Shown here piece by piece: positions 226 through 48,906 of a stretch of 64,000 nucleotides of DNA (positions are counted from its first letter, which is position 1; every line of letters begins with the position of its first letter). The translations under genes and the position numbers were made by a program. The stretch is taken from positions 233,259 through 297,258 of the IMG/VR virus record IMGVR_UViG_3300023184_000026. The stretch is one strand, 5' to 3'. A model generated the notes under the pieces. That model was not told the DNA's origin and made no database searches. It saw only the letters and a list, made by a program, of their open reading frames with translations.

Positions 226-636
226 ATGGTAACTCCGTCACAGACATATGGAATATTATTGCCTATAACTCATGGGCCGCAGGGATTTTTTAATTCAAGC
301 TATGACATTCTCGAACAGATAAAAAGCAACCTTAATGTACTTTTGAGAACGAGAAAAGGCGAGCGTAGAATGAATCCGGAATTTGGATCTGGTTTGTGGA
401 ACATCTTGTTTGAAAATTATACAGATGATATTACCCCTATGGTAAAAAATTCCATACAAAGAGATATTGCAAAATGGATGAGTTATGTAAAAATTCAAGA
501 CATTCAAATTTATACCAGTAGCGCGGAATACAAAGACAAAAACAAAGTTGGAGTAAAAGTATTATTCACGGTACCAAGTGCGGGTATCAACAAAACACAA
601 ACCATCGAAGTTGCCGTAAATTCTGGAAATATATGA
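226..636 (+). CDS. gp25: Baseplate wedge protein, GPW/gp25 family
   Basis: 136 aa; IKSNLNVLLRTRKGERRMNPEFGSGL is the typical gp25/GPW motif; overlaps the next baseplate gene (ATATGA). Confidence 0.88.
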   Translation: MVTPSQTYGILLPITHGPQGFFNSSYDILEQIKSNLNVLLRTRKGERRMNPEFGSGLWNILFENYTDDITPMVKNSIQRDIAKWMSYVKIQDIQIYTSSAEYKDKNKVGVKVLFTVPSAGINKTQTIEVAVNSGNI

Positions 637-2588
637 TACTAGATACACCAAAATCATTTCAGCCGGATAAAAAAGATGTAAAATATCTCAATAAAGATTT
701 CACTCAGTTGAAACAATCGTTGATGGATTTTGCTAAAACATACTATCCAAACACATACAAGGATTTTAGCGATGCTTCTGCGGGCATGATGTTTATTGAA
801 ATGGCTGCATATGTTGGAGATGTGTTGTCGTATTATATAGATTATCAATTTAAAGAATCTATGTTGGTTAATTCGGAAGAACGTAAGAACATAATCGATG
901 CCGCTAGATCGATGGGATATAAGATGAAGCCAATATCACCATCAGTCACAAAGTTGGATGTATATCAACTTGTGCCATCGAAGATGAACACAGGCGGTCA
1001 AATGGTTCCCGACCTAAACTATTCTCAAATCATAAAAGCTGGTATGTCAACTACCAGTGATAGCGGAATATCATTTTTAACAAATTCTCCTGTAGATTTT
1101 ACAGTGGATACAAAAAACGATCCACTGGAGGTATCCGTGTTTCAACGCAATGCAGCCGGTCAACCCGATTTTTTTGTGTTAAAAAAGACGGTTGATGCAT
1201 TTTCTGGTAGAATTGTTACAAAAACGGTGTCTATTGGAAATCCGTCTCCATTCTTAAAAGTATATTTGGACGAACCAAATGTAATTGAGGTAATGGATAT
1301 ATACGATTCCGATGGAAATCGCTGGCATGAAACGGATTATCTCGCACAAGATCTTGTACCGGTCAACTACGAGAACATTTATAAAAACGATAATACTCTA
1401 TCGGTATACAGAGATACTTCTCCGTTTTTGTTGAGATACTTGCGCACAGCAAAAAGATTCGTGACAGGAGTTGGTGCCGACAATACCACATTTTTGGAAT
1501 TTGGGTCTGGCACAAGTATCAAAGAAGACGAACTCATTGTTCCAAACGCATTCACCGTTAGTAAGCCTACCACATTCAGAGCTGAAAATATTGCATATGA
1601 TCCATCTAACTTTCTGTCGTCAAAGTCATTCGGCCAGGCTCCATCAAACACCACCCTGACAATTAGATATGTTGTTGGTGGAGGAATAACTAGCAATATA
1701 AATTCCAACTCCATAAAAAATATTAGCTCGGTGGAATTTTTCGGAGATTTGACCGAGATAGGAAAGCTTGAATTGGATCTTACAAATCTCGTGCGCCGTT
1801 CCGTCAAAGTAAATAATCCCATTTCCGCGTCGGGTGGAAGAAGCGCCGAAACAAACGATGAAATAAGAAATAACGCACTTGCTTATTTCGCCGCACAAAA
1901 CAGAGTTGTTACTCAGGGAGATTACGAGGTAAGAACATTTGCAATGCCATCAAAATATGGATCTATAGCAAAAGTTTATGCAGTAACTGATACGCAACTT
2001 GATATGGCAAACATACAAGCGACTCCGACGGAAACTCAATCGGGCCGTTTTTCTCCGGGCACAATTAACAAAGTCAACCCAAATAAAAATAATCAGTTCG
2101 CTATAAATCTTTATATATTATGTTATGACAACAACCAGCGGTTAATCACATCAAACGAAGCTATTCGCCAAAATTTGAAAAATTATCTAAATCAATATAG
2201 AATGTTGACAGACAGTGTAAATATGATTGATGGATATATCATAAATATAGGAATAGATTTTACGGTAATTGTATACAAGAATTATAATAAACGAGAAGTT
2301 CTGGCAAATTGTTTAACATTGGTTCAACAATTTTTTGATATTAATAACATTAAATTCTGTCAACCTATTAATTTAAGTCGCCTTCAATTGGAAATCGCAA
2401 AAGTGGATGGAGTACAATCTGTGACATATTTGAATGTCAAGAATTTAACCTTAAAAGATGGGGATTATTCTCCGCATGAGTATAATATAGGAAAAGCTAC
2501 TGTCGATGGAGTTATATATCCATCAATTGATCCAAGTGTATTTGAAGTCCGCTTTCCATCAAAAGATATAGTGGGGCGTGTAGCGTAA
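633..2588 (+). CDS. gp6: Baseplate wedge subunit, gp6/baseplate-J-like
   Basis: YLNKDF...YYPNTYKDFSDASAGMMFIEMAAYVGDVLSYYID N-terminus; GGRSAETNDEIR...AQNRVVTQGDY motif; follows gp25. Confidence 0.88.
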   Translation: MILDTPKSFQPDKKDVKYLNKDFTQLKQSLMDFAKTYYPNTYKDFSDASAGMMFIEMAAYVGDVLSYYIDYQFKESMLVNSEERKNIIDAARSMGYKMKPISPSVTKLDVYQLVPSKMNTGGQMVPDLNYSQIIKAGMSTTSDSGISFLTNSPVDFTVDTKNDPLEVSVFQRNAAGQPDFFVLKKTVDAFSGRIVTKTVSIGNPSPFLKVYLDEPNVIEVMDIYDSDGNRWHETDYLAQDLVPVNYENIYKNDNTLSVYRDTSPFLLRYLRTAKRFVTGVGADNTTFLEFGSGTSIKEDELIVPNAFTVSKPTTFRAENIAYDPSNFLSSKSFGQAPSNTTLTIRYVVGGGITSNINSNSIKNISSVEFFGDLTEIGKLELDLTNLVRRSVKVNNPISASGGRSAETNDEIRNNALAYFAAQNRVVTQGDYEVRTFAMPSKYGSIAKVYAVTDTQLDMANIQATPTETQSGRFSPGTINKVNPNKNNQFAINLYILCYDNNQRLITSNEAIRQNLKNYLNQYRMLTDSVNMIDGYIINIGIDFTVIVYKNYNKREVLANCLTLVQQFFDINNIKFCQPINLSRLQLEIAKVDGVQSVTYLNVKNLTLKDGDYSPHEYNIGKATVDGVIYPSIDPSVFEVRFPSKDIVGRVA

Positions 2589-2644: not shown

Positions 2645-3931
2645 ATGCACTACTTTTTATATCCAACTAAAGACGCATACATAAGCAATCTTCCAGCCTA
2701 TATGTATAAAAATACAGGATTGGACGAACTGCTTGAAGTGGAAAAGCGAATATCTACCAACGGATGCTCCAGCGTAGTTCAATATACGGAACTGGTCGGA
2801 TACACGGCATCAAGTTGCGAATTGTTGAGTGGTTCATTTTCGGGATCATTTAATCCGGAGTCAACCAGTTCTGTTGTCATTTCCAGTTCATACGAACCAA
2901 GATACACCAACACAATGAGTTCGGTTGTTTCAAGAGCACTACTTCGTTTTGATTTGGACGATGTTGCAACCGCAATAACAAATAACGAAATAATAAACCC
3001 TAAATTTTACCTCAATCTGAAAATATGTGAGTCCGTTGAAGTTCCAACAAAATACACATTATTTGCTTATCCAATTTCTCAATCTTGGGATATGGGCACC
3101 GGTTATAAATATGACGGATCAACCTCACCGGATGGTGTAAATTGGAAATTCAGTAGAGCGGATCAGATTGAAAAGTGGTGGAGTACAGGATCATTCACGG
3201 ATTGTGGTGGCGGCGGTGTGTGGTGGATAGACAGCAATACCAAAAAATCCGGTTCAGCCATTGACACACATATATATATTTCTGGAAGCTATAGTGCCAA
3301 ACAGGACTTTGATTATCAAACAAGCGATGTTAAAATGGAAGTAACTAGCATGGTGCTTGGGTGGTTAAATGAAGAAATTCAAAATAATGGTTTAATTTTG
3401 ATGCACAGCGATGAATCAAGTTCTGTTGAATATGGAACTTTGAAATTCTTCAGCAAAGAAACAAATACTATATATTCACCATATCTGGATGTTGCGTGGG
3501 ATGACTCTGTTTTAAGTTGGGAGTCACCAGGATTTGATACAGGAAGTGCCAGCCCAATTCAAATTCGAGATGCCGTAGTTGGCATAAAAAACATGGCCAC
3601 GGAATATAAGTTTGGATCAATCATCAGACTGGATGTTAGTCCCAGAAAAAGATATCCTCAAAAGACATTTACGAACAAACTTTCCGATTATTTATCACAG
3701 TACTATCTACCATCATCTAGTTTTTATCAAATAAAGGACGCCGAGAGCGAGGAAAATATATTGCCATATGATAATTTTACTCGTTTGAGCTTTGATTCAA
3801 ATGGAAATTATTTCATGCTAGACACAACTGGTCTACCGTCAGAAAGATACTACAAGGTTCAAATAAGAACAGAGCAAAGCGGGTCTATAATGACATTTGA
3901 TATCCCAACACCATTTAAGATTTCAAGATGA
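2645..3931 (+). CDS. Baseplate-associated structural protein (DNRLRE-like beta domain)
   Basis: YPTKDAYI...SRALLRFDL...QNNGLIL...FFSKE...SPYL pattern resembles DNRLRE-type domains; located in the baseplate operon. Confidence 0.55.
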   Translation: MHYFLYPTKDAYISNLPAYMYKNTGLDELLEVEKRISTNGCSSVVQYTELVGYTASSCELLSGSFSGSFNPESTSSVVISSSYEPRYTNTMSSVVSRALLRFDLDDVATAITNNEIINPKFYLNLKICESVEVPTKYTLFAYPISQSWDMGTGYKYDGSTSPDGVNWKFSRADQIEKWWSTGSFTDCGGGGVWWIDSNTKKSGSAIDTHIYISGSYSAKQDFDYQTSDVKMEVTSMVLGWLNEEIQNNGLILMHSDESSSVEYGTLKFFSKETNTIYSPYLDVAWDDSVLSWESPGFDTGSASPIQIRDAVVGIKNMATEYKFGSIIRLDVSPRKRYPQKTFTNKLSDYLSQYYLPSSSFYQIKDAESEENILPYDNFTRLSFDSNGNYFMLDTTGLPSERYYKVQIRTEQSGSIMTFDIPTPFKISR

Positions 3932-4149
3932 ATCCAAACCCAACTTTGCAAGGATACAATCAAACCGACATAGAAAAAATAACTCGCAGCGGTTCGATCA
4001 TTCCAAATATTGATAGTAGTGGAAATTTGATAATACAGAATGCTCCTGATCAGATATATAGTTCATCTATTACAATAGAGTTGATAAATGCTGTGTATAT
4101 TCCAACTAAAGTAGAAACGAAGATTGATCCTACATTTTACGAATTATAA
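3928..4149 (+). CDS. Small hypothetical protein in baseplate operon
   Basis: 73-aa ORF, 4-nt overlap with the upstream gene and 5-nt gap to the downstream gene. Confidence 0.6.
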   Translation: MNPNPTLQGYNQTDIEKITRSGSIIPNIDSSGNLIIQNAPDQIYSSSITIELINAVYIPTKVETKIDPTFYEL

Positions 4150-4154
4150 GTTAT

Positions 4155-7100
4155 ATGGAAAATTTGAATAATAGTTTGCAATTCATATCATATCCCTCGA
4201 AATCTTTGGGTCATGGATCTACATTGTCTCGGTCGGACATTATTTTTTACACAGAAAATCAAACTTCCAGTAATTTTCCGTTCGGTAAATCGGAAAAAGA
4301 CATCATAAATGTTGGCGTATATGAGCTAAGTGGTGAATTTGTTGCTTCCACAACCATTTATTCCAGTGGTTCTTACACAAAACACACCGCGTCATATTAT
4401 GATTCTTTTAATCAGTATAATCAATACTCATACAAGAAATATAATAGTGATTTTTTCATTGTTGGTAGCGACCAAAAGTCACTGCTATTTGATGTAAGCA
4501 GATGCTTGAATTCTATTGGAGTGCAGGATGGAAACTACAAGCTATATGTTGAATTAAATAGAAATATTGTTGGAAATGAAAAACAAAACGGCGAGAGACT
4601 TATCATCAATACTATTTCTACCGGAAGACAAGAAATAACATTGATACCTCAAACGCTGAGAGGTACCGATTCGGAAATAAATCGAGAATATGATATATTT
4701 TCCAACAGTCGACTTCAATTGAAAGATGTTGTTGAAGAAATATCAACGAATATTTCCAATCCCCAAATATACAACATTTATAATCTAGTGATGGAATCCA
4801 ATCCAAGTGGATCGGCTGCTCTGAAGTATAATTATGGACTCAAAACGGACGTTGACGTAATAAACTTTTTGACCGACATATATTACGGAGTATCAACCGG
4901 AAATTACAAATCAAATAGACAAATTGCCAACAATAATATTCTTGGAATATATAATCAGTTCAATAATTGGATGTATCAGAATTATGAAGCTGGAGTTACA
5001 TTCCAAATTATACAGGATTATTATTACAGTTTGTTTTTGTTTATTGTTGATAGAGAACTCAACAATATCACAAACAAACGTCCAGATAGTTTTCCCCAAA
5101 TTGTTGAATTTTTACAAACTATATTTTACAACGAAATATTTTATCCCGCGATTTATGAGGCAGAACTCAAGCGAAATATAGATTTATCCGGGTATTTTAA
5201 GTATTACTTAAATTTTACAAATGGTCAAAAAATATCGATAATCAATCAAAAATTGATTCCAACTCAAGATCCAAGGTTCTATGATTATTTAGCACTTAAA
5301 ATAATAGATCCATTGCCACAAAATTTTGACTTGGGTGCAGAGGCGTGGATCACATGTGATTTTGGATTCTTGCCAATTGTACAGAATTTATTTTATTTTT
5401 CAAAGACGGAAATTAAAACAATACCGTTGAGAGGACCAAATTTTCTTGTAAAAATAGAAAATGAGGGAAATTCCACGCAAGCTTTGTCGATGGATGAGCT
5501 AATTTCTGTCACCGGAAGTGCATACAATGAATTGGCAAAGAAGATAAGTTCGCGTGAAAACCAACTGATTGATACTACGAATTACAGAAACTTTGAAAAT
5601 TTTGTAAATTTTTCTTCGGCGGATATTAGACTTCAAGCATTTGGTGGTAAAAGAAAGCAAATCGATTCTTTGTATTATGAAATAGACACCGTTAACGCCA
5701 AACTTGTTTCGAATCCAAATGATGCATTTTATTTAAAAGAAAAATCCGATGCAAATTCTCAAATAGATGAGTTGGAGGCTGGAATGGATGGATATGAAAG
5801 ATTTTTGTATGAAAATCCCGGTTGGTATATAAAACATGGAGAGGGAGTTGATGGATACACGTCGGCATCATTCTATGATAAAAATAATGGAGGTTCATTG
5901 ATAAATAATTTGCCACAGTTCATTATAGAGGATGCAAGCAACAATGCCGATTATATAAAGTTTGTGGCCATGGTTGGTCATTTTTTTGATAATATTTCAT
6001 TGACTATAAAACAGTTAACTGAAAAAAATAATTATTCAAGTTCTCCAAATTTTGGAATATCCTTGGATATTGTTGGAGATATGCTTCGTTCACTTGGGTG
6101 GGATGCGGAAATATCAAAAGATAACCTTCCGCTTATTCTGGCGTCATTCTCAAAAAACGATTTTGACCCAGAATCTGAATTTTATTCTCAAGCCAGAAAT
6201 CTTTCCGAAGAACAAAGAAACCAAATAATATGGAAAAGATTATTGAATAGTCTTCCTTTCATATACAAAGCAAAGGGGACGGAAGCATCATTGAATGCAT
6301 TAATTTCATGCTTTGGCGTTCCAAAGAATATCATTAAAATAAAAGAATATGGCGGAATATTAAATACGAGCAATCTTACCGATACTACAGAACATATCGT
6401 GGAAGAAGTAAAATACGAGCCATATTTCAGCGGAAGTTTTGAGTATTTCGTTCTTAATTGGACCGGTAGTGCAAAGACAATTGAATTCAATTTCAGATTT
6501 GATCCAGCAAAAACAAGTGAATCTGGTACGGTTTTTAGATTGGCAAATTGTTCTGATAATTGGGTGGTTGGTGCTGTTCGCGACAGAGGAAATGATTGGG
6601 GGAAATTATTTTTCAGTATAGATGATGGGTATGGAAATGTTAAGACCGCAGTTACATCACGCGCCCCAATATTTGATGGAAATTCTTACCACGCAATGGT
6701 AAAGAGAAACGATGTTGATGTTCATTTCAATGCAACTATAAATTTGGATGAATATCCAACCAGATATGACCTACTTCTTCAAAAATCGGAAGATGATAGA
6801 ATAACTTACAGTGTAACTTCCAGTATGTTCGTGAGTGGAAGTTTCAATAATTCTTTTGGTACTGGTGAGTATCTGTATATAGGAAATTACAATCAAAGTA
6901 CTGCGTCTTTAAATATCGACCCAGAGGCTTTTTTTGGAAATATTGACGATATACGAGTATGGGAAACTCCATTATCGACCGCACGTTTTGAGGCACACAC
7001 ACTTCATAGAAATGCATATGACCTCGAAGATCCTATGGAAATGATTTCTGATAATTTGTATAGAATATCATTTGAGCGACCAGTCGATCTTTATAGTACC

Positions 7101-8885
7101 GAATCATACGCGGTGAACTTGAATAATTTATCATTTAGAAAAGATTTTCCAACATTTGGAGCCGCAAACTTTCCAGAATCTTTTGGTAAATTGGAGAGAT
7201 TGTCATATTGCGACCCATCCGAAGGCCCGTCGTTTCCATATCAGTTTTCTCGCAAGGACGTGCGAATGATAATGAAAATTCCCGATTATGGGTCCAGTAA
7301 ATTCAGAAGTAATAAAATTAATTATGTAGAACAAGAACTTTCCACAAATCTTTCTCCAGATACACGAGCGTCATATATGACGAGTGAACTGATAAGTACA
7401 GATTCAAACAAGCTCGGAATATTTTTCTCTCCGTCGGAAATGCAAAATACGGAAATCATTAAGTTCTTTGGTGAATTTCCATTGGGAGATTTGATTGGAG
7501 ATCCAGCATCCGTTTACAAAAATTCTTACGATAAATTTGAAAGATTTAGACAGATATATTATGACCAAGGATTTGGAAATATTGATTTCACATTCTTCAT
7601 GAATATTGTTCGATTCTATTTTGACAAGGCAATGTTCAAATATATAAAGGGGATAATTCCGGCCAGAGCAAAATTGGTGGACGGTATATTGATTGAACCG
7701 AGCATACTGGAAAGACCAAAGTTACAATTGAAGCCGCTGGTGAAAGAGAACATAGATCAAAAAACTGGCGAAACTTATTCAAAAAGTAAAATTAGCGTTG
7801 TAAAAGATCCGGATAGAGTTGGAATATTGAGACAGGAATACAGAGGAATTGCAACATATTCGGATGTAAATCAAGTATTTTTTCCGGCGGAACAAGATCA
7901 ATATGGTTTTGAAATTTATGGAAATAACGGATTGACATATTATAATGGAAATTATTATAGGGCGGATGTAATACCATACACGAAAAAATATCAAGTGTCG
8001 CAAAAATACGTTGCTCCATATTCTCAATTGAATGAAAACCAGATAGTGAATGATTTTTCGGGAAAAACGGAAACAATCACAAACACTTATTATAAGGTTA
8101 ATATTGCAAAATTGCCGGTTGTGGACAGATATCCAATGACTGCATCGGTTTCTCCAAGAGGCCAAGCTATACCAAAAACATATTTCAGCGGAAGTTTATA
8201 TTTTGATGCCGGTATGCGCGGTTGGCAAGATTATGCTACAACCAATTCTCACAAGCTTATGGGAATAATATCCGGTTCGGTAAATGGATTGGATGTAGTG
8301 CAGTATCCTTACATAGATCCAATATACGGTGCAATTACGAATGGTACGATTGTAAATCCAGGAATTATTATATCGGGAAGTATGTTCCAAAATGGATGTC
8401 CAGTTACATATTCTGGATATTTTGATGTTGATGGTGGTGTTCAATCGTTTGAAGGCTATATATACGGGCATTTCAGTGGAAGTTTTTTTGCTGGGAATTA
8501 TTCAAGTTCAATATATGAACGAACGGTGTATAATATTCAATTTATATCAGAAGCTCCCACATCGTCGATATTTAATATATTTTCCACACATGGTTCGGGC
8601 GATTTATTTGCGCCGCTGGCTTCTGGTCTAAATTATCGCAAGATTTACTCCATGGAATACTATCCAACAAGCTCCAAATTATTGAATGGTTACATGGAAA
8701 CTCATCACAAATATAGCAAATTGCAGTTTTCTCAAAAAGAAATTAACGCATATCAAACAAATCCAATAACCAAAGTCCAAACCAATTATAAATGGAAACG
8801 TAGTAGTCAAAATAAAAAAACTACTGTAGATCCAAAGACTGGATTGACCGACAATACTGATGCGGTTATTGTGAAAACTATATAA
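4155..8885 (+). CDS. Large baseplate/tail protein with P2 tail-I/gp7-like motif and LamG-like domain
   Basis: 1576 aa; IWKRLLNSLPFIYKAKGTEASLNALISCFG (~6230-6315) resembles the tail-I/gp7 KGT motif; TIEFNFRF...LYIGN...FFGNIDDIRVWETPLS (~6480-6980) is LamG/concanavalin-like. Confidence 0.65.
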   Translation: MENLNNSLQFISYPSKSLGHGSTLSRSDIIFYTENQTSSNFPFGKSEKDIINVGVYELSGEFVASTTIYSSGSYTKHTASYYDSFNQYNQYSYKKYNSDFFIVGSDQKSLLFDVSRCLNSIGVQDGNYKLYVELNRNIVGNEKQNGERLIINTISTGRQEITLIPQTLRGTDSEINREYDIFSNSRLQLKDVVEEISTNISNPQIYNIYNLVMESNPSGSAALKYNYGLKTDVDVINFLTDIYYGVSTGNYKSNRQIANNNILGIYNQFNNWMYQNYEAGVTFQIIQDYYYSLFLFIVDRELNNITNKRPDSFPQIVEFLQTIFYNEIFYPAIYEAELKRNIDLSGYFKYYLNFTNGQKISIINQKLIPTQDPRFYDYLALKIIDPLPQNFDLGAEAWITCDFGFLPIVQNLFYFSKTEIKTIPLRGPNFLVKIENEGNSTQALSMDELISVTGSAYNELAKKISSRENQLIDTTNYRNFENFVNFSSADIRLQAFGGKRKQIDSLYYEIDTVNAKLVSNPNDAFYLKEKSDANSQIDELEAGMDGYERFLYENPGWYIKHGEGVDGYTSASFYDKNNGGSLINNLPQFIIEDASNNADYIKFVAMVGHFFDNISLTIKQLTEKNNYSSSPNFGISLDIVGDMLRSLGWDAEISKDNLPLILASFSKNDFDPESEFYSQARNLSEEQRNQIIWKRLLNSLPFIYKAKGTEASLNALISCFGVPKNIIKIKEYGGILNTSNLTDTTEHIVEEVKYEPYFSGSFEYFVLNWTGSAKTIEFNFRFDPAKTSESGTVFRLANCSDNWVVGAVRDRGNDWGKLFFSIDDGYGNVKTAVTSRAPIFDGNSYHAMVKRNDVDVHFNATINLDEYPTRYDLLLQKSEDDRITYSVTSSMFVSGSFNNSFGTGEYLYIGNYNQSTASLNIDPEAFFGNIDDIRVWETPLSTARFEAHTLHRNAYDLEDPMEMISDNLYRISFERPVDLYSTESYAVNLNNLSFRKDFPTFGAANFPESFGKLERLSYCDPSEGPSFPYQFSRKDVRMIMKIPDYGSSKFRSNKINYVEQELSTNLSPDTRASYMTSELISTDSNKLGIFFSPSEMQNTEIIKFFGEFPLGDLIGDPASVYKNSYDKFERFRQIYYDQGFGNIDFTFFMNIVRFYFDKAMFKYIKGIIPARAKLVDGILIEPSILERPKLQLKPLVKENIDQKTGETYSKSKISVVKDPDRVGILRQEYRGIATYSDVNQVFFPAEQDQYGFEIYGNNGLTYYNGNYYRADVIPYTKKYQVSQKYVAPYSQLNENQIVNDFSGKTETITNTYYKVNIAKLPVVDRYPMTASVSPRGQAIPKTYFSGSLYFDAGMRGWQDYATTNSHKLMGIISGSVNGLDVVQYPYIDPIYGAITNGTIVNPGIIISGSMFQNGCPVTYSGYFDVDGGVQSFEGYIYGHFSGSFFAGNYSSSIYERTVYNIQFISEAPTSSIFNIFSTHGSGDLFAPLASGLNYRKIYSMEYYPTSSKLLNGYMETHHKYSKLQFSQKEINAYQTNPITKVQTNYKWKRSSQNKKTTVDPKTGLTDNTDAVIVKTI

Positions 8886-8914
8886 AAAAATAAGAAAAAA
8901 GAGAATGGCGTATA

Positions 8915-8922
8915 TATTTATT
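8915..8922 (+). promoter_or_regulatory. TATTTATT variant of the putative late motif
   Basis: 16 nt before ATG 8939. Confidence 0.45.
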
Positions 8923-8938
8923 AGGAAAGTAACACTAT

Positions 8939-9568
8939 ATGGCGTATATCAATAATCAGACAATCACTGTGGATGCGGTTCTCACAAAAAAGGGCAGAGA
9001 ATTGCTGGCGGCAAAAGGCGGTCTTAATATCACATCGTATGCTCTTTCGGATGATGAAATTGATTATAGTTTGTATCAACCAAATCACCCACAGGGATCG
9101 GCATATTATGACCTCGCCGTTCGTAATACTCCGGTGTTTGAAGCATTCACAGATGAAACTCAAGCTTTAAAATATAAGCTAGTAACATTGCCTTCTGGAC
9201 AGACTTCAATCCCAGTTATCAGTCTTGGTCAAAGTTCCATCAACGTTGACAATGATTACAAAGGAGAGGTTGTTGTTGTTCCAAGCACAAATCCAGCGTA
9301 CAACACCACACTTGGATACACTGCAATTTTAGCTAATAAAACCGTTGGCACTATTGTTGGAGAGCAGCTTCAGACCGCAACAACTGCAACAATTCCAACA
9401 TTCATTGGGGATGTTTCGTCCACAACTGCACAAGTAGCACTTGGATTAAGATTTAGATTTGTACCAAATATGTCATTGACCACTACAACTGGAACTACTC
9501 TAACAATCATTGGCAACGAGAGTGGTGGGTCAATTTCGATCCCAGTCACTGTTAACGTAAGAAATTAA
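8939..9568 (+). CDS. Virion structural protein (baseplate/tail)
   Basis: 209 aa, Thr/Val-rich; N-terminal DAVLTKKGRELLA...ITSYALSDDEIDY; late-type motif upstream. Confidence 0.6.
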   Translation: MAYINNQTITVDAVLTKKGRELLAAKGGLNITSYALSDDEIDYSLYQPNHPQGSAYYDLAVRNTPVFEAFTDETQALKYKLVTLPSGQTSIPVISLGQSSINVDNDYKGEVVVVPSTNPAYNTTLGYTAILANKTVGTIVGEQLQTATTATIPTFIGDVSSTTAQVALGLRFRFVPNMSLTTTTGTTLTIIGNESGGSISIPVTVNVRN

Positions 9569-9578
9569 TTAAAATCAT

Positions 9579-10688
9579 ATGATCTTCAAGCAATTTGATC
9601 AAACGGACATAGTGGCGGGAAGATCCCAGCCAGTGTCCACCGGAATGTGGAGCGACGGCGAAACGAACTGGTCTCAGTTTTATACCAGCAGTATTCAAAC
9701 GACGCAGTCATCATCGCTGTATGAACCGTTAAATGGACTGTATTATACCAACGTTTATGATTATCCAGTAGCGTCCGCCAGTTCCGACGTATATTTTTCG
9801 ATTACGTATGGTCACTCCGCAGGATCGGGTTCTTCAACATTCGACAAAAACGCGTCACAGGGAAGTTTGATATATCCAACAAAGGCAATATACAATCAAT
9901 ACCGAAATTTACTGTTGGCACCCGGTGATTCTAAATTTACATTTGTTAAATCGGATAATAACGGAAACCAGACACAGATTGATTCTGATGATATTTACGC
10001 AATTTCATTTAGAGGCACAAAATACAAAGATCGTTTAGATCCCGGCCAATTTGAATTTACACTAAGTGGGTCCAGTGGAGCAAATGGAAAAATTACACTG
10101 ATAGATGATTCCAGAATTAATCCGGAAACTGGTGTGCAGACTGGTGGAAAGCGTTATAATCTTATACGAGGTTCGATTGAAAGCGGATCTTTGTCCACGA
10201 CAAAAAATTACGAAGCAATTGGATCTATATACCCAGACTTGGGAATAATCATATTGAACCCGACAGTTCTTCAGTCGTTGGTTGGAAATGTTGGTGGAAT
10301 ATCCTTGAACGATTATACTTCAAACTATTGGGGTGATGGATTTGCACGAATGCAGAATGTTCTCTTCGCATCTATAAAACAGGGTGCGGCTGCGTTGCCA
10401 ATGAAAGCGAGAGTAACTGAATATGTTCCCGCTCGTCATTATTTTGTGAGAGTAAAGAACCAAGAGTATAATTACAGCAACAATCCAACATTTATTATAT
10501 CTGACAAATCTAGTTCGGAGTATGGTAAATTGAGATTCACCGATTTTTATACCAATCCAAAAGTATATGTAACCTCGGTTGGTCTATATAATGAAACAAA
10601 CGACTTGGTTGCTGTTGCAAAACTGAGTCAGCCGTTATTAAAAGACTTTACCAACGAGTGTCTTATAAAAATTAAGATAGATGTTTAA
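9579..10688 (+). CDS. Virion structural protein, paralog of 10819-14181
   Basis: C-terminal EYNYSNNPT...VTSVGLYNETNDLVAVAKLSQP matches EFNYSTNPT...ITTVGLYDGNELVAVGKLGRP of the next gene; similar N-termini (MIFKQF/MIKQF). Confidence 0.6.
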   Translation: MIFKQFDQTDIVAGRSQPVSTGMWSDGETNWSQFYTSSIQTTQSSSLYEPLNGLYYTNVYDYPVASASSDVYFSITYGHSAGSGSSTFDKNASQGSLIYPTKAIYNQYRNLLLAPGDSKFTFVKSDNNGNQTQIDSDDIYAISFRGTKYKDRLDPGQFEFTLSGSSGANGKITLIDDSRINPETGVQTGGKRYNLIRGSIESGSLSTTKNYEAIGSIYPDLGIIILNPTVLQSLVGNVGGISLNDYTSNYWGDGFARMQNVLFASIKQGAAALPMKARVTEYVPARHYFVRVKNQEYNYSNNPTFIISDKSSSEYGKLRFTDFYTNPKVYVTSVGLYNETNDLVAVAKLSQPLLKDFTNECLIKIKIDV

Positions 10689-10805
10689 CTAATAAAAGTT
10701 AAATTTTACATTGTTTAAGTAGTGTGTTTTGGGATGGGTTATAAAGAAATGTTGTCAATTGTAAAAACTCGCTCTATCGGCAAGTGAATACTCAAACATT
10801 GATTA

Positions 10806-10813
10806 TATTTATC
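10806..10813 (+). promoter_or_regulatory. TATTTATC variant of the putative late motif
   Basis: 5 nt before ATG 10819. Confidence 0.45.
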
Positions 10814-10818
10814 TATAT

Positions 10819-13800
10819 ATGATAAAGCAGTTCTCCGCAGGAGATATCACAGTAAGACCATTTAAGACTTTCAAACACTGGAGCGTTCAGAGTGTACATC
10901 TTGGTCATAAGGATGCATATGGATTTAATACTTATTATGATAATCTGTGTGAAGTTAATGAGGGAATAAAAAATACTTCCATATTTTATCCATCTGGGAG
11001 TTCATATTATACAGCGTCAGTTGAATTGATTAATCCATCTGGAAAATATGCCAGAAATATATACAGCCTCACAGACTCCATGTTTTATCGCAACAAGAAA
11101 AATTTTATGGAGTTGTTTGGTGTTGAAAGTATTGTAACGGACACGGCAACTGGAAAAAAGGAAGTAAGAAATATACACGATAGAGTTGTTACTTTGGCAC
11201 TAAATCAAACAAATTTTGGTGAAAAAATAAGACCGGAAACCGTTGAAATAGTGGACAATTCCAATCCACATGCCACATATATCATCAAAGATGATGGATA
11301 TACCAATCTTTATATCACGGGATCACATTTTTCTGAATACACATATTTGAGTGCAATGAGGAACATATATCCTCGACCGTATTGGAACACTTCAAGTGGG
11401 GAATTTCATTTGAATTTATTAGACGGAGAATCCAAGCATATAGATGTTGATACCGCAAAAGAATATCTTAAACTTGGCATGAATGTTTCGTATACCGGTA
11501 CATCCGATTATTTATACGATTCAAGTTCGTTGGTTGATACATTTCAATCGGATAATGAACATTTTGGAGAAGCAGTTAGCTCGTGGTATAAATATGTTGT
11601 GGCCGGTTCATCTATAGACAAATATAATTTGAATACGGGAAGTCAAGGCTATGCGGCCATATTCAAATATGATGATAATTTGGGAATTCACAGACCAATA
11701 AAGAAATTTACATCGCCGTTGAGAGACGTTGGATTCTTGCAAGACTTTGATATAGACAAGACATTTCCATACACTGTGGAGAATTTGCAAAATAGTGGTT
11801 CGTATTTTACTGACACATTTGGACAGTCTGTGTCTGTCCGTGATAACTTTTTGGCAGTTGGGTCATCGTCCGGTTCAATATGTTTTCCAACCGGTTCATA
11901 TCCAGGATATGTGTTTGTGTATGATAAATACAAAGGCGGAACCGATAATTGGGGGTTGATAAATATTATACAAGGAAATTCAAATGGAGATAATTTTGGT
12001 AAATCGGTTTCATTGGACAGAGATACCCTCGCCATAGGCGCACCGGGAGTCAGCGGTTCGGGTGCCGTGTATATCTTCAGACGAAAACAATACATGAGCG
12101 GTGGATGCGATGCAATTGAAACAAGTTCGTTTTGGCAAACATTATCTCCGGAAACGGACTTGTGCGACGAAATTATATCAGAATCCGGTTCTTTGATTAT
12201 ATACAGCGAAAGACCAATTCCTTGGACATACTCGTCGATGGCATATACAAGTTCAAGCATCGAACTTTTAAGCGGATCAATGTCGGCATCTTATGATCCA
12301 AATTCTACGGATACAAGAAGAGTATCAAGTTCATATTATCGAGTCGAAAATGGCGCTTGGTCTGGAAGTTATAGTTGGGAATATGAAGCCATCCTCACTT
12401 CCAGTGTTTTATCACTGGGAGACAACTTTGGATGGTGCGTTGCACTTGATTCTGGCAGCTTGTTTGTTGGAACAAACAAGACCGGAAATGGATATGCAAC
12501 ATTGTTTACATGCTCTTATTACTCATCTTCCGTCGGCGATTGTCCAACGGCTTCTTGGGGAGAAGCAAAAACATTCAGAAGAGATGGTACATATGGTGAC
12601 TTGGATATGTCTTCTCAATTCTATTCAATTGACGTGACGGGTGTATCAATATCGGACGATGGATTTGGTACGTCGGTTGCGATTGGTGGAAAAAACCTTG
12701 TAATTGGATGTCTTCGCGACAAGGCATTTATTCCATATGCGTCATATACAGGATCACCGACCAGTCTGGGTTCTGCGTATTTTTATAGAAATGACTATCG
12801 CTGCGGTTCTCTGGGATATTGGCAAGTGTTGAAAACATTTGGCGATAGAAAATATCAGTATAATAATAATTTTGGGAAATCCGTGTCTCTGGGAGGATTA
12901 TATAGCGCGATCACTTCTTGGTCCGACAAAGTTGGAAGAAATGTTGATTACTTCAATGGTGAATATATCATAGACGATTTATTATACCAAGCAAGTTCAT
13001 CGGATGATCCAAATGGAGTGCTGGGTAGAGTTGCCATATACAAATACAGTGATGTAAATGAAACATGGCAATTGACAGAAACCATACGACGCAACAAAGA
13101 AGCAAATAAGCCATCAAATATTTATGGATATTCAGTTTGCTTATGCTCAGATTTCATGGTTGTGGGTGCGCCGGTTGTTCATTTTGCAACTGCGAGTGCC
13201 ACGGCTTCGGTGTACGATCCAAACAACCTTGTTGATTTTCCGGCAAATTGCTCCGGTTCTGTGTATGTTTACAACGTCACAAATCTTGAGGACAATCCGC
13301 TTATAGGAAATGTATTTTACAAAAATGGATATTTTGCACTTACTCACACGGGATCAAATTATCGCGATATATTTACAAAAACCGGATCGGGTGGGTTTGA
13401 CCTAACGTATCAAGGATCACATACAATCTATGAACACGAATATCTGACATCTATTCGACCGGGCGAATTTAATTATAGTACAAATCCAACATCATTGGTA
13501 AAAACTCCATTAATGTTTGACGTAAACCAAGATGGTGTGTTTGATTTTCTTGACGTTGATTTGATAATGAGATTTTTTCAAAAAAGAAAATTCTTTGAAG
13601 AATTTATTTTCGACGATAATGGTGTAGTACTTGAACAAAGTTCAAACGCTGATAATAGTTGGTGGGGAGATGATATTCTACAACTTGAATCCGAAGACGT
13701 ACTGCTTCAGGAACAAACAGGCAGTGCAGCTTATATTGCAAGTTCTTCATTCAATGCTTTCACAAAAACTGCATATGACTATATTCAGAGCAATCTTATT

Positions 13801-14181
13801 GACACGGAATTGCTTGATATAGATGGTGACGGTAAAATCAACATGAATGATGCGAACATACTTGCATTATATTATTTAGAACGACTTGTTCCACAAAATC
13901 TGATACCTTTATTATCACCGGCCTCAACAAGAAAATATGTAAGGGATATAAATGATTATCTCAATCCATATTGCCATACTGATATTCACAAGGTCAATCC
14001 ACATTTCTTGGAATATGAATATAGTTCATCATATGATCCCACCGGTTCATATCTGGCACCATTTATAACAACTGTTGGATTATATGATGGAAATGAGCTT
14101 GTGGCGGTTGGAAAATTGGGCAGACCTGTTAAAAATTTAATAGATTGGCCCGTTAATATCATTGTTCGTTTTGATACATGA
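10819..14181 (+). CDS. Virion protein with seven FG-GAP repeats (beta-propeller) and two dockerin/EF-hand-like Ca-binding loops
   Basis: Seven F/Y-G-x-[SAC]-V repeats (EHFGEAVS, DTFGQSVS, DNFGKSVS..AIGAP, DNFGWCVA, DGFGTSVA, NNFGKSVS, NIYGYSVC..VVGAP); DVNQDGVFDFLD and DIDGDGKINMND loops. Confidence 0.7.
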   Translation: MIKQFSAGDITVRPFKTFKHWSVQSVHLGHKDAYGFNTYYDNLCEVNEGIKNTSIFYPSGSSYYTASVELINPSGKYARNIYSLTDSMFYRNKKNFMELFGVESIVTDTATGKKEVRNIHDRVVTLALNQTNFGEKIRPETVEIVDNSNPHATYIIKDDGYTNLYITGSHFSEYTYLSAMRNIYPRPYWNTSSGEFHLNLLDGESKHIDVDTAKEYLKLGMNVSYTGTSDYLYDSSSLVDTFQSDNEHFGEAVSSWYKYVVAGSSIDKYNLNTGSQGYAAIFKYDDNLGIHRPIKKFTSPLRDVGFLQDFDIDKTFPYTVENLQNSGSYFTDTFGQSVSVRDNFLAVGSSSGSICFPTGSYPGYVFVYDKYKGGTDNWGLINIIQGNSNGDNFGKSVSLDRDTLAIGAPGVSGSGAVYIFRRKQYMSGGCDAIETSSFWQTLSPETDLCDEIISESGSLIIYSERPIPWTYSSMAYTSSSIELLSGSMSASYDPNSTDTRRVSSSYYRVENGAWSGSYSWEYEAILTSSVLSLGDNFGWCVALDSGSLFVGTNKTGNGYATLFTCSYYSSSVGDCPTASWGEAKTFRRDGTYGDLDMSSQFYSIDVTGVSISDDGFGTSVAIGGKNLVIGCLRDKAFIPYASYTGSPTSLGSAYFYRNDYRCGSLGYWQVLKTFGDRKYQYNNNFGKSVSLGGLYSAITSWSDKVGRNVDYFNGEYIIDDLLYQASSSDDPNGVLGRVAIYKYSDVNETWQLTETIRRNKEANKPSNIYGYSVCLCSDFMVVGAPVVHFATASATASVYDPNNLVDFPANCSGSVYVYNVTNLEDNPLIGNVFYKNGYFALTHTGSNYRDIFTKTGSGGFDLTYQGSHTIYEHEYLTSIRPGEFNYSTNPTSLVKTPLMFDVNQDGVFDFLDVDLIMRFFQKRKFFEEFIFDDNGVVLEQSSNADNSWWGDDILQLESEDVLLQEQTGSAAYIASSSFNAFTKTAYDYIQSNLIDTELLDIDGDGKINMNDANILALYYLERLVPQNLIPLLSPASTRKYVRDINDYLNPYCHTDIHKVNPHFLEYEYSSSYDPTGSYLAPFITTVGLYDGNELVAVGKLGRPVKNLIDWPVNIIVRFDT

Positions 14182-14565: not shown

Positions 14566-15057
14566 ATGAAAGTATTGGGATTGGATTTATCCACCACAAC
14601 TTGTGGTTGGGCTGTAGCAGAAAATAAGATTATTATTGGTGCTGGATTTGTTGATATTTCTGATGTGATTGAGTATGCTGCCAAAGCAGAACTTATTATA
14701 ACTGCTTTAAAAGGTCAAACTTTTGAGAAAATAATGATTGAAGAAAGCTTGTTTGGATTTGCTGGCGGAGGCACTTCGCAGCAAGTTATAATCAAACTTG
14801 TGAAAAACAAGGCAGTTGTTGGTTATATCTTAGAAAACCATTATAAATTGAAAGTAGAAAGCATACATGCTCAAACAGCACGAAAGAAAGCATTTGGAAT
14901 TGCAAGAATCAAAGGAATAAAGTCAAAAGTGTTTGTAAAAGAGCAAGTTGAGAAACTATATGACATGAAGCCTTGGACTATTCTTAATAAAAAGGGCAAT
15001 GAAGAAAAAAGAATGGAGGACGTAAGAGACGCTATAGTATTAAGTTTAGCGGGTTGA
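14566..15057 (+). CDS. ruvC: RuvC-like Holliday junction resolvase
   Basis: MKVLGLDLSTTTCGWAV, IMIEE and C-terminal EDVRDAIVL give the RNase H-fold D/E/D/D catalytic pattern. Confidence 0.8.
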   Translation: MKVLGLDLSTTTCGWAVAENKIIIGAGFVDISDVIEYAAKAELIITALKGQTFEKIMIEESLFGFAGGGTSQQVIIKLVKNKAVVGYILENHYKLKVESIHAQTARKKAFGIARIKGIKSKVFVKEQVEKLYDMKPWTILNKKGNEEKRMEDVRDAIVLSLAG

Positions 15058-28862: not shown

Positions 28863-28868
28863 AATATT

Positions 28869-33909: not shown

Positions 33910-34004
33910 TAAGTTTTTGATTGAAATTGGGTCAAATAAGTTTCATCATGATAAATTAGAAATATTTGCAGATTCAAATAAAAGTTTTATAAAATTAAAA
34001 TAAT

Positions 34005-36144: not shown

Positions 36145-36531
36145 ATGGAATTGCAGCAGTTTATACCGTCAGATCAAATTATTTTAGCTATTGCCGAAAA
36201 AGTTAAAAAAAAATTTCCGTCCTCAAATGGCAAGTGTGAATTTATGTCGCAAGAACTGGTTTCTGATTTGAATAAAAAAGGAATACGATCCAATCATGTA
36301 ATGGGAATATTCACACTTGATGAACCCGGTGCATGGAAATACAGATCAGAAGAGGATGAAGAATTTGATGAGTATCAAGTTAATCATGATTGGGTAAATG
36401 TGGAAGGAAAAATATTAGACATATCCGCCGATCAATTTAAAAAGTACGTAAATCAAAATATACCAAATGTAGTATATATAAGATACTCAGATCCATTATA
36501 TAAATATTACACGGAGATGGGTTATGTCTGA
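36145..36531 (+). CDS. Small transglutaminase/papain-like fold protein
   Basis: Candidate triad GKCEF (C 36235), NHDWV (H 36385), ILDIS (D 36418). Confidence 0.5.
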   Translation: MELQQFIPSDQIILAIAEKVKKKFPSSNGKCEFMSQELVSDLNKKGIRSNHVMGIFTLDEPGAWKYRSEEDEEFDEYQVNHDWVNVEGKILDISADQFKKYVNQNIPNVVYIRYSDPLYKYYTEMGYV

Positions 36532-48852: not shown

Positions 48853-48906
48853 GTCAAAATATTTTGATGTTTGAGATTTATGATTGATATATATAGATAT
48901 AATTCT

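What the first reader, a model, noticed from the sequence alone, without database searches (positions are those of the whole stretch)
2801..12336. The same 31-aa Ser-rich cassette sits inside two unrelated baseplate proteins
Seen: 2801-2893 encodes YTASSCELLSGSFSGSFNPESTSSVVISSSY and 12244-12336 encodes YTSSSIELLSGSMSASYDPNSTDTRRVSSSY. They align without gaps at 19/31 identities, yet the host proteins (DNRLRE-like vs FG-GAP propeller) share nothing else I can see. In the propeller the cassette lies between blades 3 and 4. Codons have diverged, so conservation acts at protein level. Inference: a portable surface tag, either a glycan-acceptor loop for the phage glycosyltransferases or a docking motif for a common partner.
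Basis: partly seen in the sequence, partly recalled or inferred. Interest (0 to 1): 0.62.

Follow-up and report, generated by a model that had tools for sequence, protein, structure and literature searches.

The report
Serine-rich hairpin copied between baseplate proteins
A 31-residue serine-rich hairpin tip native to one baseplate protein family of freshwater jumbo phages has, in this one phage species, also been pasted into a floppy loop of an unrelated baseplate protein; it may be a sugar-attachment tag for the phage's own TibC-type protein glycosyltransferase, but that is untested.

Summary
The two 31-aa segments share 19 identities (BLASTP E 2e-6). A profile built from other phages' cassettes finds exactly these two sites in the 297-kb genome (E 3e-16 and 8e-14; next best E 0.4).

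The cassette is native to the DNRLRE/CBM96-like baseplate protein (2645-3931). There it is the conserved tip of a 51-residue strand-loop-strand insertion. It was gained in one crown clade and lost a few times.

The copy in the FG-GAP propeller (10819-14181) is a 42-codon insertion. It is present only in this phage species and absent from 96 orthologues, including the nearest relative at 78% identity. It resembles other phages' cassettes (up to 84% nt, 27-28/31 aa) far more than the resident copy (59% nt). It lies in a loop that AlphaFold2 models with low confidence. It is fixed in lake metagenomes from 2017 to 2024, where it carries only synonymous variants.

No third host protein was found.

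Function is not shown. The window also encodes an equivalog-level Aah/TibC "strand-loop-strand" serine O-heptosyltransferase (34005-36125), which makes the glycan-acceptor idea concrete. That enzyme also occurs in cassette-less relatives, so the link is not specific.

The parts
2645..3931 (+). Gene of the DNRLRE/CBM96-like baseplate protein (P0003, 428 aa), the native host family of the cassette. It follows the gp25-like and gp6/J-like wedge genes.
   Evidence: NF033679 scores 39.7 bits against a cut-off of 34. PF24517 scores 20.8 bits, below its cut-off. The AF2 model has pLDDT 88 and its N-domain matches CBM structures 8wab and 7vbo. The gene order matches phage immuto and Mel-JY01.
2765..2917 (+). 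51-codon insertion (residues 41-91) relative to cassette-less orthologues. It is modelled as a long beta-hairpin (strands 44-53 and 80-89) with a structured tip.
   Evidence: Alignment with the immuto and Mel-JY01 orthologues and with 120 metagenomic orthologues. AF2 secondary structure, with pLDDT 84-94 over residues 51-90.
2801..2893 (+). Resident copy of the 31-aa cassette. It is unusually diverged from the family consensus; for example, the near-invariant Asp-Pro is replaced by Ser-Ser.
   Evidence: It sits on a long branch (1.8) in the cassette nucleotide tree.
10819..14181 (+). Gene of the FG-GAP seven-blade-propeller baseplate protein (P0004, 1120 aa), with dockerin-like loops near the C-terminus. 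It is the second host.
   Evidence: PF14312 scores 84.4 bits and PF00404 scores 27.4 bits. The AF2 model matches integrin alpha propellers at E about 1e-10.
12220..12345 (+). 42-codon lineage-specific insertion (residues 468-509): 8 unrelated codons, the cassette, then 3 unrelated codons. It lies inside a low-confidence loop (residues 436-515).
   Evidence: It is absent from 96 orthologues, including the nearest relative L018 at 78% aa and 74% nt identity. There is no target-site duplication and there are no terminal repeats. pLDDT is 24-35. It is present without gaps in 4 lake metagenomes and in 5 IMG/VR contigs.
12244..12336 (+). Second, consensus-like copy of the cassette.
   Evidence: 57.1 bits against the family HMM, higher than the resident copy. 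It shares 78/93 nt with L005, 75/93 with L182 and L055, 72/93 with L179, and 55/93 with the resident copy. Its three population variants are all synonymous.
34005..36125 (+). Candidate modifying enzyme (inference only). The 706-aa protein has a GT1-like N-domain and a full Aah/TibC-type autotransporter strand-loop-strand O-heptosyltransferase module (residues 335-705).
   Evidence: TIGR04414 equivalog, 352.9 bits against a cut-off of 200. TibC 4RB4 matches at E 1.3e-74. The residues aligned to TibC Cys339/342/358/370, Thr226, Lys230, Arg286 and Trp305 are conserved, and Asp aligns with TibC position 110 (with PMC4358343).
26928..33909 (+). Sugar-modification gene cluster upstream of the heptosyltransferase: GT1+FkbM methyltransferase, DegT-like aminotransferase, hexapeptide acyltransferase, CmcI-like methyltransferase and GT2. 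This is context for the glycosylation hypothesis.
   Evidence: Pfam hits.
226..2588 (+). gp25-like (226-636) and gp6/J-like (633-2588) wedge genes. They identify the module as a baseplate.
   Evidence: PF04965 scores 47 bits; phrog_261, phrog_43 and phrog_219 are baseplate wedge subunit families.

Best explanation
SHOWN (about 0.85-0.9).
- The cassette is one homologous module, not a chance match.
- It arose as the conserved tip of a roughly 50-residue strand-loop-strand excursion. The excursion sits in a loop of the DNRLRE/CBM96-like baseplate protein of a clade of freshwater jumbo phages.
- In that family it is kept by purifying selection and was secondarily lost a few times.
- In the window's phage species alone, a second copy was inserted in frame, with 11 unrelated flanking codons, into a long loop of the FG-GAP propeller protein that is modelled with low confidence.
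- That copy is consensus-like. It is much closer to the cassettes of other phage lineages than to the present resident copy.
- It is therefore not a recent duplicate of the resident copy.

INFERRED, origin.
- The copy arose by illegitimate recombination with a P0003-type gene, most simply one from a co-infecting relative, because this baseplate module is visibly mosaic.
- An older copy of the lineage's own ancestral cassette, followed by faster divergence of the resident copy, is not excluded.

INFERRED, function (about 0.35, the largest single share).
- The cassette is a self-contained surface strand-loop-strand element that displays nine near-invariant serines.
- It serves as an acceptor motif for the phage's own Aah/TibC-type serine O-heptosyltransferase (34005-36125).
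- The transplant would then add a glycan-bearing loop to a second peripheral baseplate protein.
For: Homology.
- Family HMM: E 3.3e-16 and 7.6e-14, with exactly two hits in the genome. BLASTP E 2e-6.

Native family.
- 53 of about 120 orthologues carry the cassette. It is a conserved island, 0.83 against flanks of 0.56 and 0.51.
- A tree built without the insert columns places it in a crown clade, 50 of 57 rows. The tree needs at least 5 changes, 2 of them forced by well-supported branches.
- Cassette-less relatives keep the same gene module.

Transplant.
- Only the window's own protein among 98 FG-GAP orthologues has the cassette. The nearest relative, L018, lacks it.
- IMG/VR: 70 cassettes in the first family and 5 in the second, all 5 from this species.
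- The representative search found only a fragment of a P0003 orthologue.

Not from the present resident copy.
- 55/93 nt and 6/19 shared codons with the resident copy. By comparison: 78/93 and 20/26 with L005, 72/93 and 17/23 with L179, 75/93 with L182.
- The background same-codon rate between distant family members is 0.43.
- Flanks are at random identity, 13/60 and 14/60.

Mosaic module.
- L018 is the nearest relative for the propeller (78% aa), but its P0003 orthologue belongs to another clade (63% aa).

Fixed and constrained.
- Four lake metagenomes carry it with no gaps, and all 3 variants in the cassette are synonymous.

Structure.
- Hairpin at pLDDT 84-94 in P0003. Low-confidence loop in P0004.

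Glycan link.
- TIGR04414 352.9 bits and TibC E 1.3e-74, with catalytic, sugar-binding and iron-finger residues conserved.
- These enzymes modify Ser but not Thr, and they recognise a strand-loop-strand motif (PMC4358343; PMC3835316).
- In 66 distinct cassettes the nine positions that are at least 95% Ser never show Thr.
- In another BAHT-positive lineage the same loop holds a much longer Ser-rich insert: the ORF is 557-632 aa against about 375 aa in cassette-less orthologues.
Against: Function.
- No modification has been shown.
- The heptosyltransferase is not specific to cassette-bearing phages. It is present in the cassette-less L148 record (54% identity) and in Mel-JY01 (46%), and absent from immuto.
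- Non-serine positions (Glu, Leu-Leu, Gly, Asp-Pro, Val, Tyr) are as conserved as the serines. A loose acceptor motif would not need that; it suits a fold or an interface.
- No ADP-heptose pathway genes (CTP_transf_like, SIS_2) were found in the phage genome.

Origin.
- With only 93 homologous bases the donor cannot be resolved. The cassette nucleotide tree is a polytomy.
- An own-clade relative, L179, is nearly as close as L005.
- In the propeller the cassette is modelled without alignment information, so its local fold is unknown.
Confidence: 0.45

Rival explanations
1. Docking motif. The hairpin tip is a protein-protein interface that binds a common baseplate or fibre partner. Copying it into the propeller gave that protein a second attachment point for the same partner.
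For: It is a conserved island between variable linkers. Hydrophobic and aromatic positions are as conserved as the serines. The tip is modelled with high confidence in P0003. The transplanted copy kept the consensus sequence and shows only synonymous variation in the population.
Against: No gene, and no indel of 4 or more residues, in gp25, gp6, the 73-aa, 209-aa or 369-aa proteins, the roughly 1580-aa protein or the propeller co-varies with cassette presence. Only two cassette-less genomes were available for this test. In another lineage the same loop holds a much longer Ser-rich insert, which is hard to reconcile with a defined interface. No partner was identified.
Confidence: 0.25
2. Structural element in the first protein, neutral passenger in the second. 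The hairpin merely stabilises or decorates the CBM-like domain. The copy in the propeller is a tolerated product of illegitimate recombination in a permissive loop and has no function of its own.
For: The insertion site is a pre-existing variable, low-confidence loop. Only one lineage has the insertion. The cassette was lost at least twice in its native family without loss of the protein, so it is dispensable.
Against: The insert stays in frame and consensus-like, with 27-28/31 identities to other lineages. It is fixed in lakes sampled from 2017 to 2024, with 3 synonymous and 0 non-synonymous variants. Meanwhile the resident copy has drifted. These numbers are small.
Confidence: 0.25
3. Recent intragenomic duplication. 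The resident copy was copied directly into the propeller gene within this genome.
For: Both copies lie 9.4 kb apart in one module on the same strand.
Against: The two copies share 59% nt, third positions at the random level, and the same codon at 6 of 19 identical residues. That is less than the resident gene shares with any orthologue of its clade (0.42-0.57). The second copy is closer to foreign cassettes.
Confidence: 0.05
4. Chance or convergent similarity of two Ser-rich low-complexity stretches.
For: Both proteins are Ser-rich (14% and 11%), and SGS-hydrophobic turns are common in them.
Against: HMM E 3e-16, with the next genome hit at E 0.37. 84% nt identity to a cassette from another phage, with 20/26 shared codons. 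Sharp homology boundaries.
Confidence: 0.01

Closest known systems
Acceptor motifs of the bacterial autotransporter heptosyltransferases Aah/TibC (AIDA-I, TibA, Ag43)
   Same: Both are Ser-containing strand-loop-strand elements. In the known cases they are recognised by structure rather than by a sequon, and only Ser is modified, not Thr (PMC4358343, PMC3835316). The window encodes an equivalog-level member of this enzyme family.
   Different: The known substrates are repeats of a beta-helical secreted passenger domain in bacteria. Here the candidate is a single hairpin in phage baseplate proteins. No modification is shown, and the enzyme also occurs in phages without the cassette.
Virion O-glycosylation in mycobacteriophages (Freeman et al. 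2023, as cited in PMC12619734)
   Same: Phage-encoded glycosyltransferases decorate virion proteins on Ser/Thr-rich segments.
   Different: There the acceptors are C-terminal tails of capsid and tail-tube subunits, and the enzymes are of other families. Here the candidate is an internal hairpin of baseplate proteins and the enzyme is TibC-type. This comparison is drawn from the literature and was not tested here.
Mosaic exchange of modules among phage tail, fibre and baseplate genes (my own knowledge; for example Ig-like accessory domains appearing in different virion proteins)
   Same: A small accessory module appears in non-homologous virion proteins through recombination among related phages. 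The module lies at the periphery and is dispensable.
   Different: The unit is only 31 residues (93 nt), smaller than a domain. It was inserted into the middle of a domain loop, and only one transfer is documented.
Integrin alpha-subunit FG-GAP propellers with an inserted I domain
   Same: Both are seven-blade FG-GAP propellers (Foldseek E about 1e-10) that accept an inserted module in a loop between blades.
   Different: The integrin insert is a 200-residue ligand-binding domain between blades 2 and 3 (my own knowledge). Here the insert is a 42-residue segment of unknown fold, later in the propeller.
DNRLRE / CBM96 carbohydrate-binding jelly rolls (8wab, 7vbo)
   Same: The N-domain of the first host passes NF033679 and matches these folds with TM-score (normalised by target) 0.67 and 0.58.
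   Different: The solved modules lack the 51-residue hairpin insertion. Sugar binding by the phage protein is untested.

Membership tests
DNRLRE domain / CBM96 (first host, 2645-3931) | Match to the curated family model above its cut-off | tested here: met
   NF033679 scores 39.7 bits against a cut-off of 34, over residues 90-283, starting just after the insertion. Pfam PF24517 reaches only 20.8 bits against a cut-off of 26, but cassette-less orthologues carry precomputed PF24517 hits.
DNRLRE domain / CBM96 (first host, 2645-3931) | Beta-sandwich jelly-roll fold like solved CBM96 modules | tested here: met
   The AF2 model has pLDDT 88. Foldseek matches 8wab at E 1e-5 and TMt 0.67, and 7vbo at TMt 0.58.
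DNRLRE domain / CBM96 (first host, 2645-3931) | Binds an acidic polysaccharide | not testable with these tools
   Needs binding assays.
FG-GAP beta-propeller (second host, 10819-14181) | FG-GAP repeats above the Pfam cut-off and a seven-blade propeller fold | tested here: met
   PF14312 scores 84.4 bits against a cut-off of 23. The model's strands span residues 252-833. Integrin alpha propellers are the top Foldseek hits, at E 2e-10 and TMt up to 0.59.
Aah/TibC autotransporter heptosyltransferase (BAHT) family (34005-36125) | Match to the equivalog model TIGR04414 above its cut-off | tested here: met
   352.9 bits against a cut-off of 200, E 1.8e-105, residues 335-705 over profile positions 7-374 of 374.
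Aah/TibC autotransporter heptosyltransferase (BAHT) family (34005-36125) | Four iron-finger cysteines, a catalytic Asp, and the sugar-binding Thr, Lys, Arg and Trp | tested here: met
   In the alignment to 4RB4, Cys aligns with TibC 339, 342, 358 and 370. Asp aligns with position 110, which is Ala in that chain; the paper names Asp-110 as the catalytic base. Thr226, Lys230, Arg286 and Trp305 are conserved. Residue roles are taken from PMC4358343.
Aah/TibC autotransporter heptosyltransferase (BAHT) family (34005-36125) | Transfers heptose to Ser of a protein substrate; dodecameric ring | not testable with these tools
   Needs an enzyme assay and mass spectrometry. The complex prediction with the P0004 loop gave no verdict.
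BAHT acceptor motif (the cassette itself) | [quoted passage not shown] | tested here: inconclusive
   In P0003 the insertion is modelled as strands 44-53 and 80-89 around a Ser-rich tip. In P0004 the region is modelled with low confidence. Which serines would be acceptors is unknown.
BAHT acceptor motif (the cassette itself) | Co-occurrence of the acceptor with the enzyme | tested here: not met
   The enzyme is present in many cassette-bearing contigs. It is also present in the cassette-less L148 record and in Mel-JY01. There is no specific association.
Mobile genetic element (MITE, intron or intein-like insert) | Terminal repeats, a target-site duplication, or many copies | tested here: not met
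   No flanking direct or inverted repeats beyond 8-12 nt chance matches. There are two copies in the genome and two host families in all collections searched.

The most novel reading that the evidence does not exclude
The cassette is a transplantable strand-loop-strand glycosylation tag. A phage-encoded Aah/TibC-type serine O-heptosyltransferase is conserved across this lineage of freshwater jumbo phages and sits in a sugar-modification cluster next to the morphogenesis genes. On this reading it glycosylates serines in the cassette and in the SGS-hydrophobic turns of the peripheral baseplate and fibre proteins. Copying the tag into the propeller would then re-pattern the glycan coat of the baseplate. 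This would be the first case of virion O-heptosylation by a BAHT enzyme, and of a glycosylation tag moving between virion proteins.
Probability: 0.22. Interest if true: 0.8.

Novelty: new variant of a known kind. Interest (0 to 1): 0.5.

Why it matters
The case shows phage mosaicism working below the domain level. A 93-nt coding patch moved in frame into an unrelated virion gene and was then fixed in a natural population.

It also gives a clean natural experiment:
- one phage species with the cassette in two hosts;
- close relatives with it in one host;
- other relatives with it in none.

The enzyme lead matters too. Autotransporter-type serine O-heptosyltransferases are known from bacterial adhesins. 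I found no paper describing a phage one, though that search covers only open-access papers and preprints. If the cassette is its substrate, the family gains a 31-residue acceptor tag that can be tested and grafted, and phage baseplates gain a glycan coat that could affect adsorption or evasion of host defences. If it is a docking motif instead, it marks a partner still to be found in an uncharacterised baseplate architecture.

Tried and rejected
1. Phage GenBank records. A near-DNA search of 2645-14181 found nothing. tblastn of the propeller found nothing. PHROGs found nothing for the three large proteins.

2. A third copy. The C-terminus of the 1576-aa protein (4155-8885) looked cassette-like by eye, but the family HMM does not hit it.

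Two degenerate DNA patterns had too few fixed bases. The corrected patterns worked.

4. The profile search of 1.84 billion representatives returned only one fragment. Representatives at 50% identity hide indels inside clusters, so this result has limited power.

5. Nucleotide-level constraint. The same-codon rate in the cassette (0.43) barely exceeds that of the rest of the gene (0.39), so a DNA or RNA element is rejected.

6. Partner by co-variation. No gene or indel co-varies with the cassette; only two cassette-less genomes were available.

7. Donor identification. The tree of the 93 nt is unresolved. Own-clade DNA (L179-L182) did not settle a foreign against an ancestral-own origin. No DNA was available for P0012.

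8. Mobile-element signatures at the insertion: none.

9. Complex prediction of the heptosyltransferase module with the P0004 loop gave no verdict (score 0.00). It is not evidence either way.

10. SGS-hydrophobic enrichment as a BAHT signature. It is 16-22x over shuffles here, 11x in Mel-JY01 (which has the enzyme) and 6x in immuto (which lacks it). With three genomes this is inconclusive.

11. ADP-heptose pathway genes in the phage: none found.

12. Sequence searches of solved structures found no relative of either host protein.

13. Literature searches found no paper on Mel-JY01 and none on phage BAHTs.

Full report
**The observation**

They lie in ORF 2645-3931 (428 aa, residues 53-83) and ORF 10819-14181 (1120 aa, residues 476-506).

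BLASTP of the two proteins gives one significant, gapless alignment: 19/33 identities, E 2e-6 with compositional adjustment. Nothing else scores below E 6.9. At the DNA level the copies share 55/93 bases, 11/31 third positions, and the same codon at only 6 of 19 identical residues.

**Context**

The window is the last 64 kb of a 297,258-bp phage record with 37% G+C. CheckV rates the record complete.

- Genes 226-636 and 633-2588 are gp25-like and gp6/J-like wedge proteins.
- Next come the first host, a 73-aa ORF, a 1576-aa protein, a 209-aa protein, a 369-aa protein, and then the second host.
- The same gene order occurs in Flavobacterium phage immuto and Microcystis phage Mel-JY01 and in many metagenomic contigs.

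The first host passes the NCBIfam DNRLRE-domain model. Its AlphaFold2 model (pLDDT 88) has a CBM96-like jelly roll. The second host is a seven-blade FG-GAP propeller of the integrin-alpha type, with dockerin-like loops.

The phage is found in lake and freshwater metagenomes from 19 studies. It resembles the recently described 'moraphages' in genome size, habitat and glycosyltransferase content (PMC12619734). Membership of that lineage was not tested.

**It is true homology, and there are only two copies**

An HMM built from the cassettes of orthologues of the first host finds exactly two sites in the six-frame translation of the genome:

| Site | Score | E-value |
|---|---|---|
| Copy in the propeller | 57.1 bits | 3.3e-16 |
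| Resident copy | 49.6 bits | 7.6e-14 |
| Next best hit | - | 0.37 |

The propeller copy fits the family consensus better than the resident copy does.

**Native family**

Of about 120 orthologues of the first host, 53 carry the cassette. Relative to the immuto and Mel-JY01 proteins it lies inside a 51-residue insertion.

Among cassette-bearing orthologues the 31 residues form a conserved island, with a mean majority fraction of 0.83. The linkers on either side score 0.56 and 0.51. The protein's best core segments score 0.85-0.89.

On a tree built without the insert columns, the cassette is confined to a crown clade (50 of 57 rows). A few cassette-less lineages are nested inside it. The tree needs at least 5 changes, 2 of which are forced by well-supported branches. 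This pattern fits one gain followed by several losses.

Synonymous sites in the cassette are about as saturated as in the rest of the gene (same-codon rate 0.43 against 0.39). Selection therefore acts on the peptide, not on a DNA or RNA element.

The AlphaFold2 model shows the insertion as a long hairpin (strands 44-53 and 80-89) with a structured, partly helical tip. pLDDT is 84-94 over residues 51-90.

**The second copy is a single, lineage-specific transplant**

Among 98 aligned orthologues of the propeller protein (32-81% identity), only the window's own protein and its 99%-identical cluster carry the cassette. In them it lies within a 42-residue insertion. The nearest relative, L018 (78% aa, 74% nt), lacks the insertion, although its first-host orthologue has a cassette.

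Two degenerate-pattern scans of IMG/VR recovered 75 cassettes. Seventy are in orthologues of the first host. Five are in the propeller, and all five come from contigs 99% identical to the window.

A profile search of 1.84 billion cluster representatives returned only a fragment of a first-host orthologue. Representatives at 50% identity can hide indels, so this result is supporting evidence, not proof.

In four lake metagenomes from different studies (2017-2024), contigs cross the site without gaps or joints. The three variant sites inside the cassette (12268, 12309, 12315) are all synonymous by my reading of the codons.

The insertion has no flanking repeats or target-site duplication. It lies in an 80-residue stretch that AlphaFold2 models with pLDDT 24-35. 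The alignment given to the model holds no information on the insert, so its local fold is unknown.

**Where the second copy came from**

| Compared with the propeller copy | nt identity (of 93) | Same codon at identical residues |
|---|---|---|
| L005 | 78 (84%) | 20/26 |
| L182 | 75 | 14/27 |
| L055 | 75 | 17/23 |
| L179 (closest known relative of the resident gene) | 72 | 17/23 |
| Resident copy | 55 | 6/19 |

- Homology stops sharply at the cassette borders. Flank identity is 13/60 and 14/60, the random level.
- The 93-nt tree is a polytomy, so the donor cannot be named.
- The present resident copy is excluded as a recent source. It sits on a very long branch. It has lost the extra conservation the cassette enjoys elsewhere, including the near-invariant Asp-Pro.
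- The module is mosaic. The propeller's nearest relative, L018, carries a first-host gene of a different clade.

I therefore favour recombination with a co-infecting relative. An older copy of the lineage's own ancestral cassette, followed by drift of the resident copy, remains possible. The coincidence of a consensus-like new copy with a drifting old copy suggests that the function may have moved to the new site. That is an inference from a single lineage.

**Function**

Nothing here shows a function. Three readings remain.

(a) Glycan acceptor (about 0.35)
- The window holds a sugar-modification cluster at 26928-36125.
- Its last gene (34005-36125) encodes a GT1-like domain fused to a full Aah/TibC-type module. 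TIGR04414 'autotransporter strand-loop-strand O-heptosyltransferase' scores 352.9 bits against a cut-off of 200. TibC 4RB4 matches at E 1.3e-74 over residues 351-704.
- The four iron-finger cysteines, the sugar-binding Thr, Lys, Arg and Trp, and an Asp at the catalytic-base position are all conserved. The residue roles come from PMC4358343.
- These enzymes modify Ser but not Thr (PMC4358343). [quoted passage not shown]
- The cassette is modelled as such an element. Across 66 distinct cassettes, its nine positions that are at least 95% Ser never show Thr.
- In a more distant lineage that also has the enzyme, the same loop carries a much longer Ser-rich insert. The ORF is 557-632 aa, against about 375 aa for cassette-less orthologues.
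- Against this reading: the enzyme also occurs in cassette-less phages (the L148 record and Mel-JY01) and is absent from immuto. The non-serine positions are equally conserved. The phage lacks recognisable ADP-heptose genes.

(b) Docking motif (about 0.25)
- The conservation pattern fits an interface.
- However, no gene or indel in the neighbouring baseplate proteins co-varies with the cassette, on only two cassette-less genomes.

(c) Structural in the first host and a neutral passenger in the second (about 0.25)

A complex prediction of the enzyme module with the propeller loop gave no verdict.

**Comparison with what is known, and novelty**

The event is a small-scale case of the well-known mosaicism of phage tail genes. 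The unit is a 31-residue sub-domain placed inside a domain loop, which is unusual but not a new kind of phenomenon.

The cassette matches no described family. The most novel element is the possible pairing with a phage-encoded BAHT enzyme. I found no paper describing one in phages, though that search covers only open-access papers and preprints.

I rate the finding a new variant of a known kind, with interest 0.5. The glycosylation-tag reading has probability about 0.22 and would deserve about 0.8 if true.

Noticed in passing
window 34005-36125 (+): The 706-aa protein combines a GT1-like domain with a complete Aah/TibC-type autotransporter serine O-heptosyltransferase module (TIGR04414 352.9 bits; TibC 4RB4 E 1.3e-74; key residues conserved). 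Homologues at 51-99% identity occur on 61 IMG/VR contigs and in Microcystis phage Mel-JY01. I found no literature on phage members of this family.
   Followed up: partly
window 26928-33909 (+): A sugar-modification cluster lies just upstream of the terminase (36524-38179), portal (38241-40202) and gp23-like capsid (47180-48793) genes. It holds a GT1+FkbM methyltransferase fusion, a DegT-like aminotransferase fragment, a hexapeptide acyltransferase, a CmcI-like methyltransferase and a GT2.
   Followed up: no
window 2645-3931, 4155-8885, 10819-14181, 51188-52444, 57792-60155: The tetrapeptide Ser-Gly-Ser-hydrophobic is over-represented in these ORFs relative to shuffles: 16-22x in the three baseplate proteins, about 50x in 51188-52444 and about 8x in 57792-60155. 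It is absent from the gp6-like, portal, capsid, SbcCD and glycosyltransferase proteins. Enrichment is 11x in the Mel-JY01 baseplate genes and 6x in those of immuto. Its meaning is unknown; it may be a beta-turn motif or an acceptor site.
   Followed up: partly
L142:1036-2706 (+) and L145 (- strand ORF, 632 aa): In a more distant lineage, the orthologue of the first host carries a long Ser/Gly/Thr-rich insert at the same loop where the cassette sits. The ORFs are 557 and 632 aa, against about 375 aa for cassette-less orthologues. This loop is a hot spot for Ser-rich expansions.
   Followed up: partly
L018:1888-3228 versus L018:10001-13234: The baseplate module is mosaic. L018 has the propeller closest to the window's (78% aa), but its first-host gene belongs to a different clade (63% aa). 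The window's first-host gene is closest to P0008-P0010 (70-71% aa).
   Followed up: partly
window 3248-3298 (+): There is a second, 17-residue Ser-rich insertion in the first host (residues 202-218) relative to the immuto and Mel-JY01 orthologues.
   Followed up: no
window 11725-11808 (+) (residues 303-330 of the propeller protein): A second low-confidence excursion (pLDDT 31-44) lies between the first and second blades of the propeller model.
   Followed up: no
window 13795-13866 (+): A dockerin type I-like calcium-binding loop (PF00404, 27.4 bits against a cut-off of 22.9) lies in the helical C-terminal region of the propeller protein.
   Followed up: no
window 54638-57655 (+): This 1005-aa ORF has 18% serine, the most Ser-rich large protein in the window. 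It would be an obvious alternative substrate for a serine glycosyltransferase. It has not been annotated.
   Followed up: no
window 48871-49659 and 49685-50479 (+): A GIY-YIG endonuclease and a DNA/RNA non-specific endonuclease lie directly after the major capsid gene. The former may be a homing endonuclease.
   Followed up: no
window 16784-19990 (+): A single 1068-aa ORF fuses SbcD-like (Metallophos) and SbcC-like (SMC_N) parts. A RuvC-like resolvase (14566-15057) and a primase (15809-16780) lie immediately after the baseplate module.
   Followed up: no
L078:9057-9998 and L179:4863-5741: Some relatives have an extra 292-313-aa gene (faint MTES_1575 hit) between the gp6-like gene and the first host. 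The window lacks it.
   Followed up: no
Membership was not tested.
   Followed up: no
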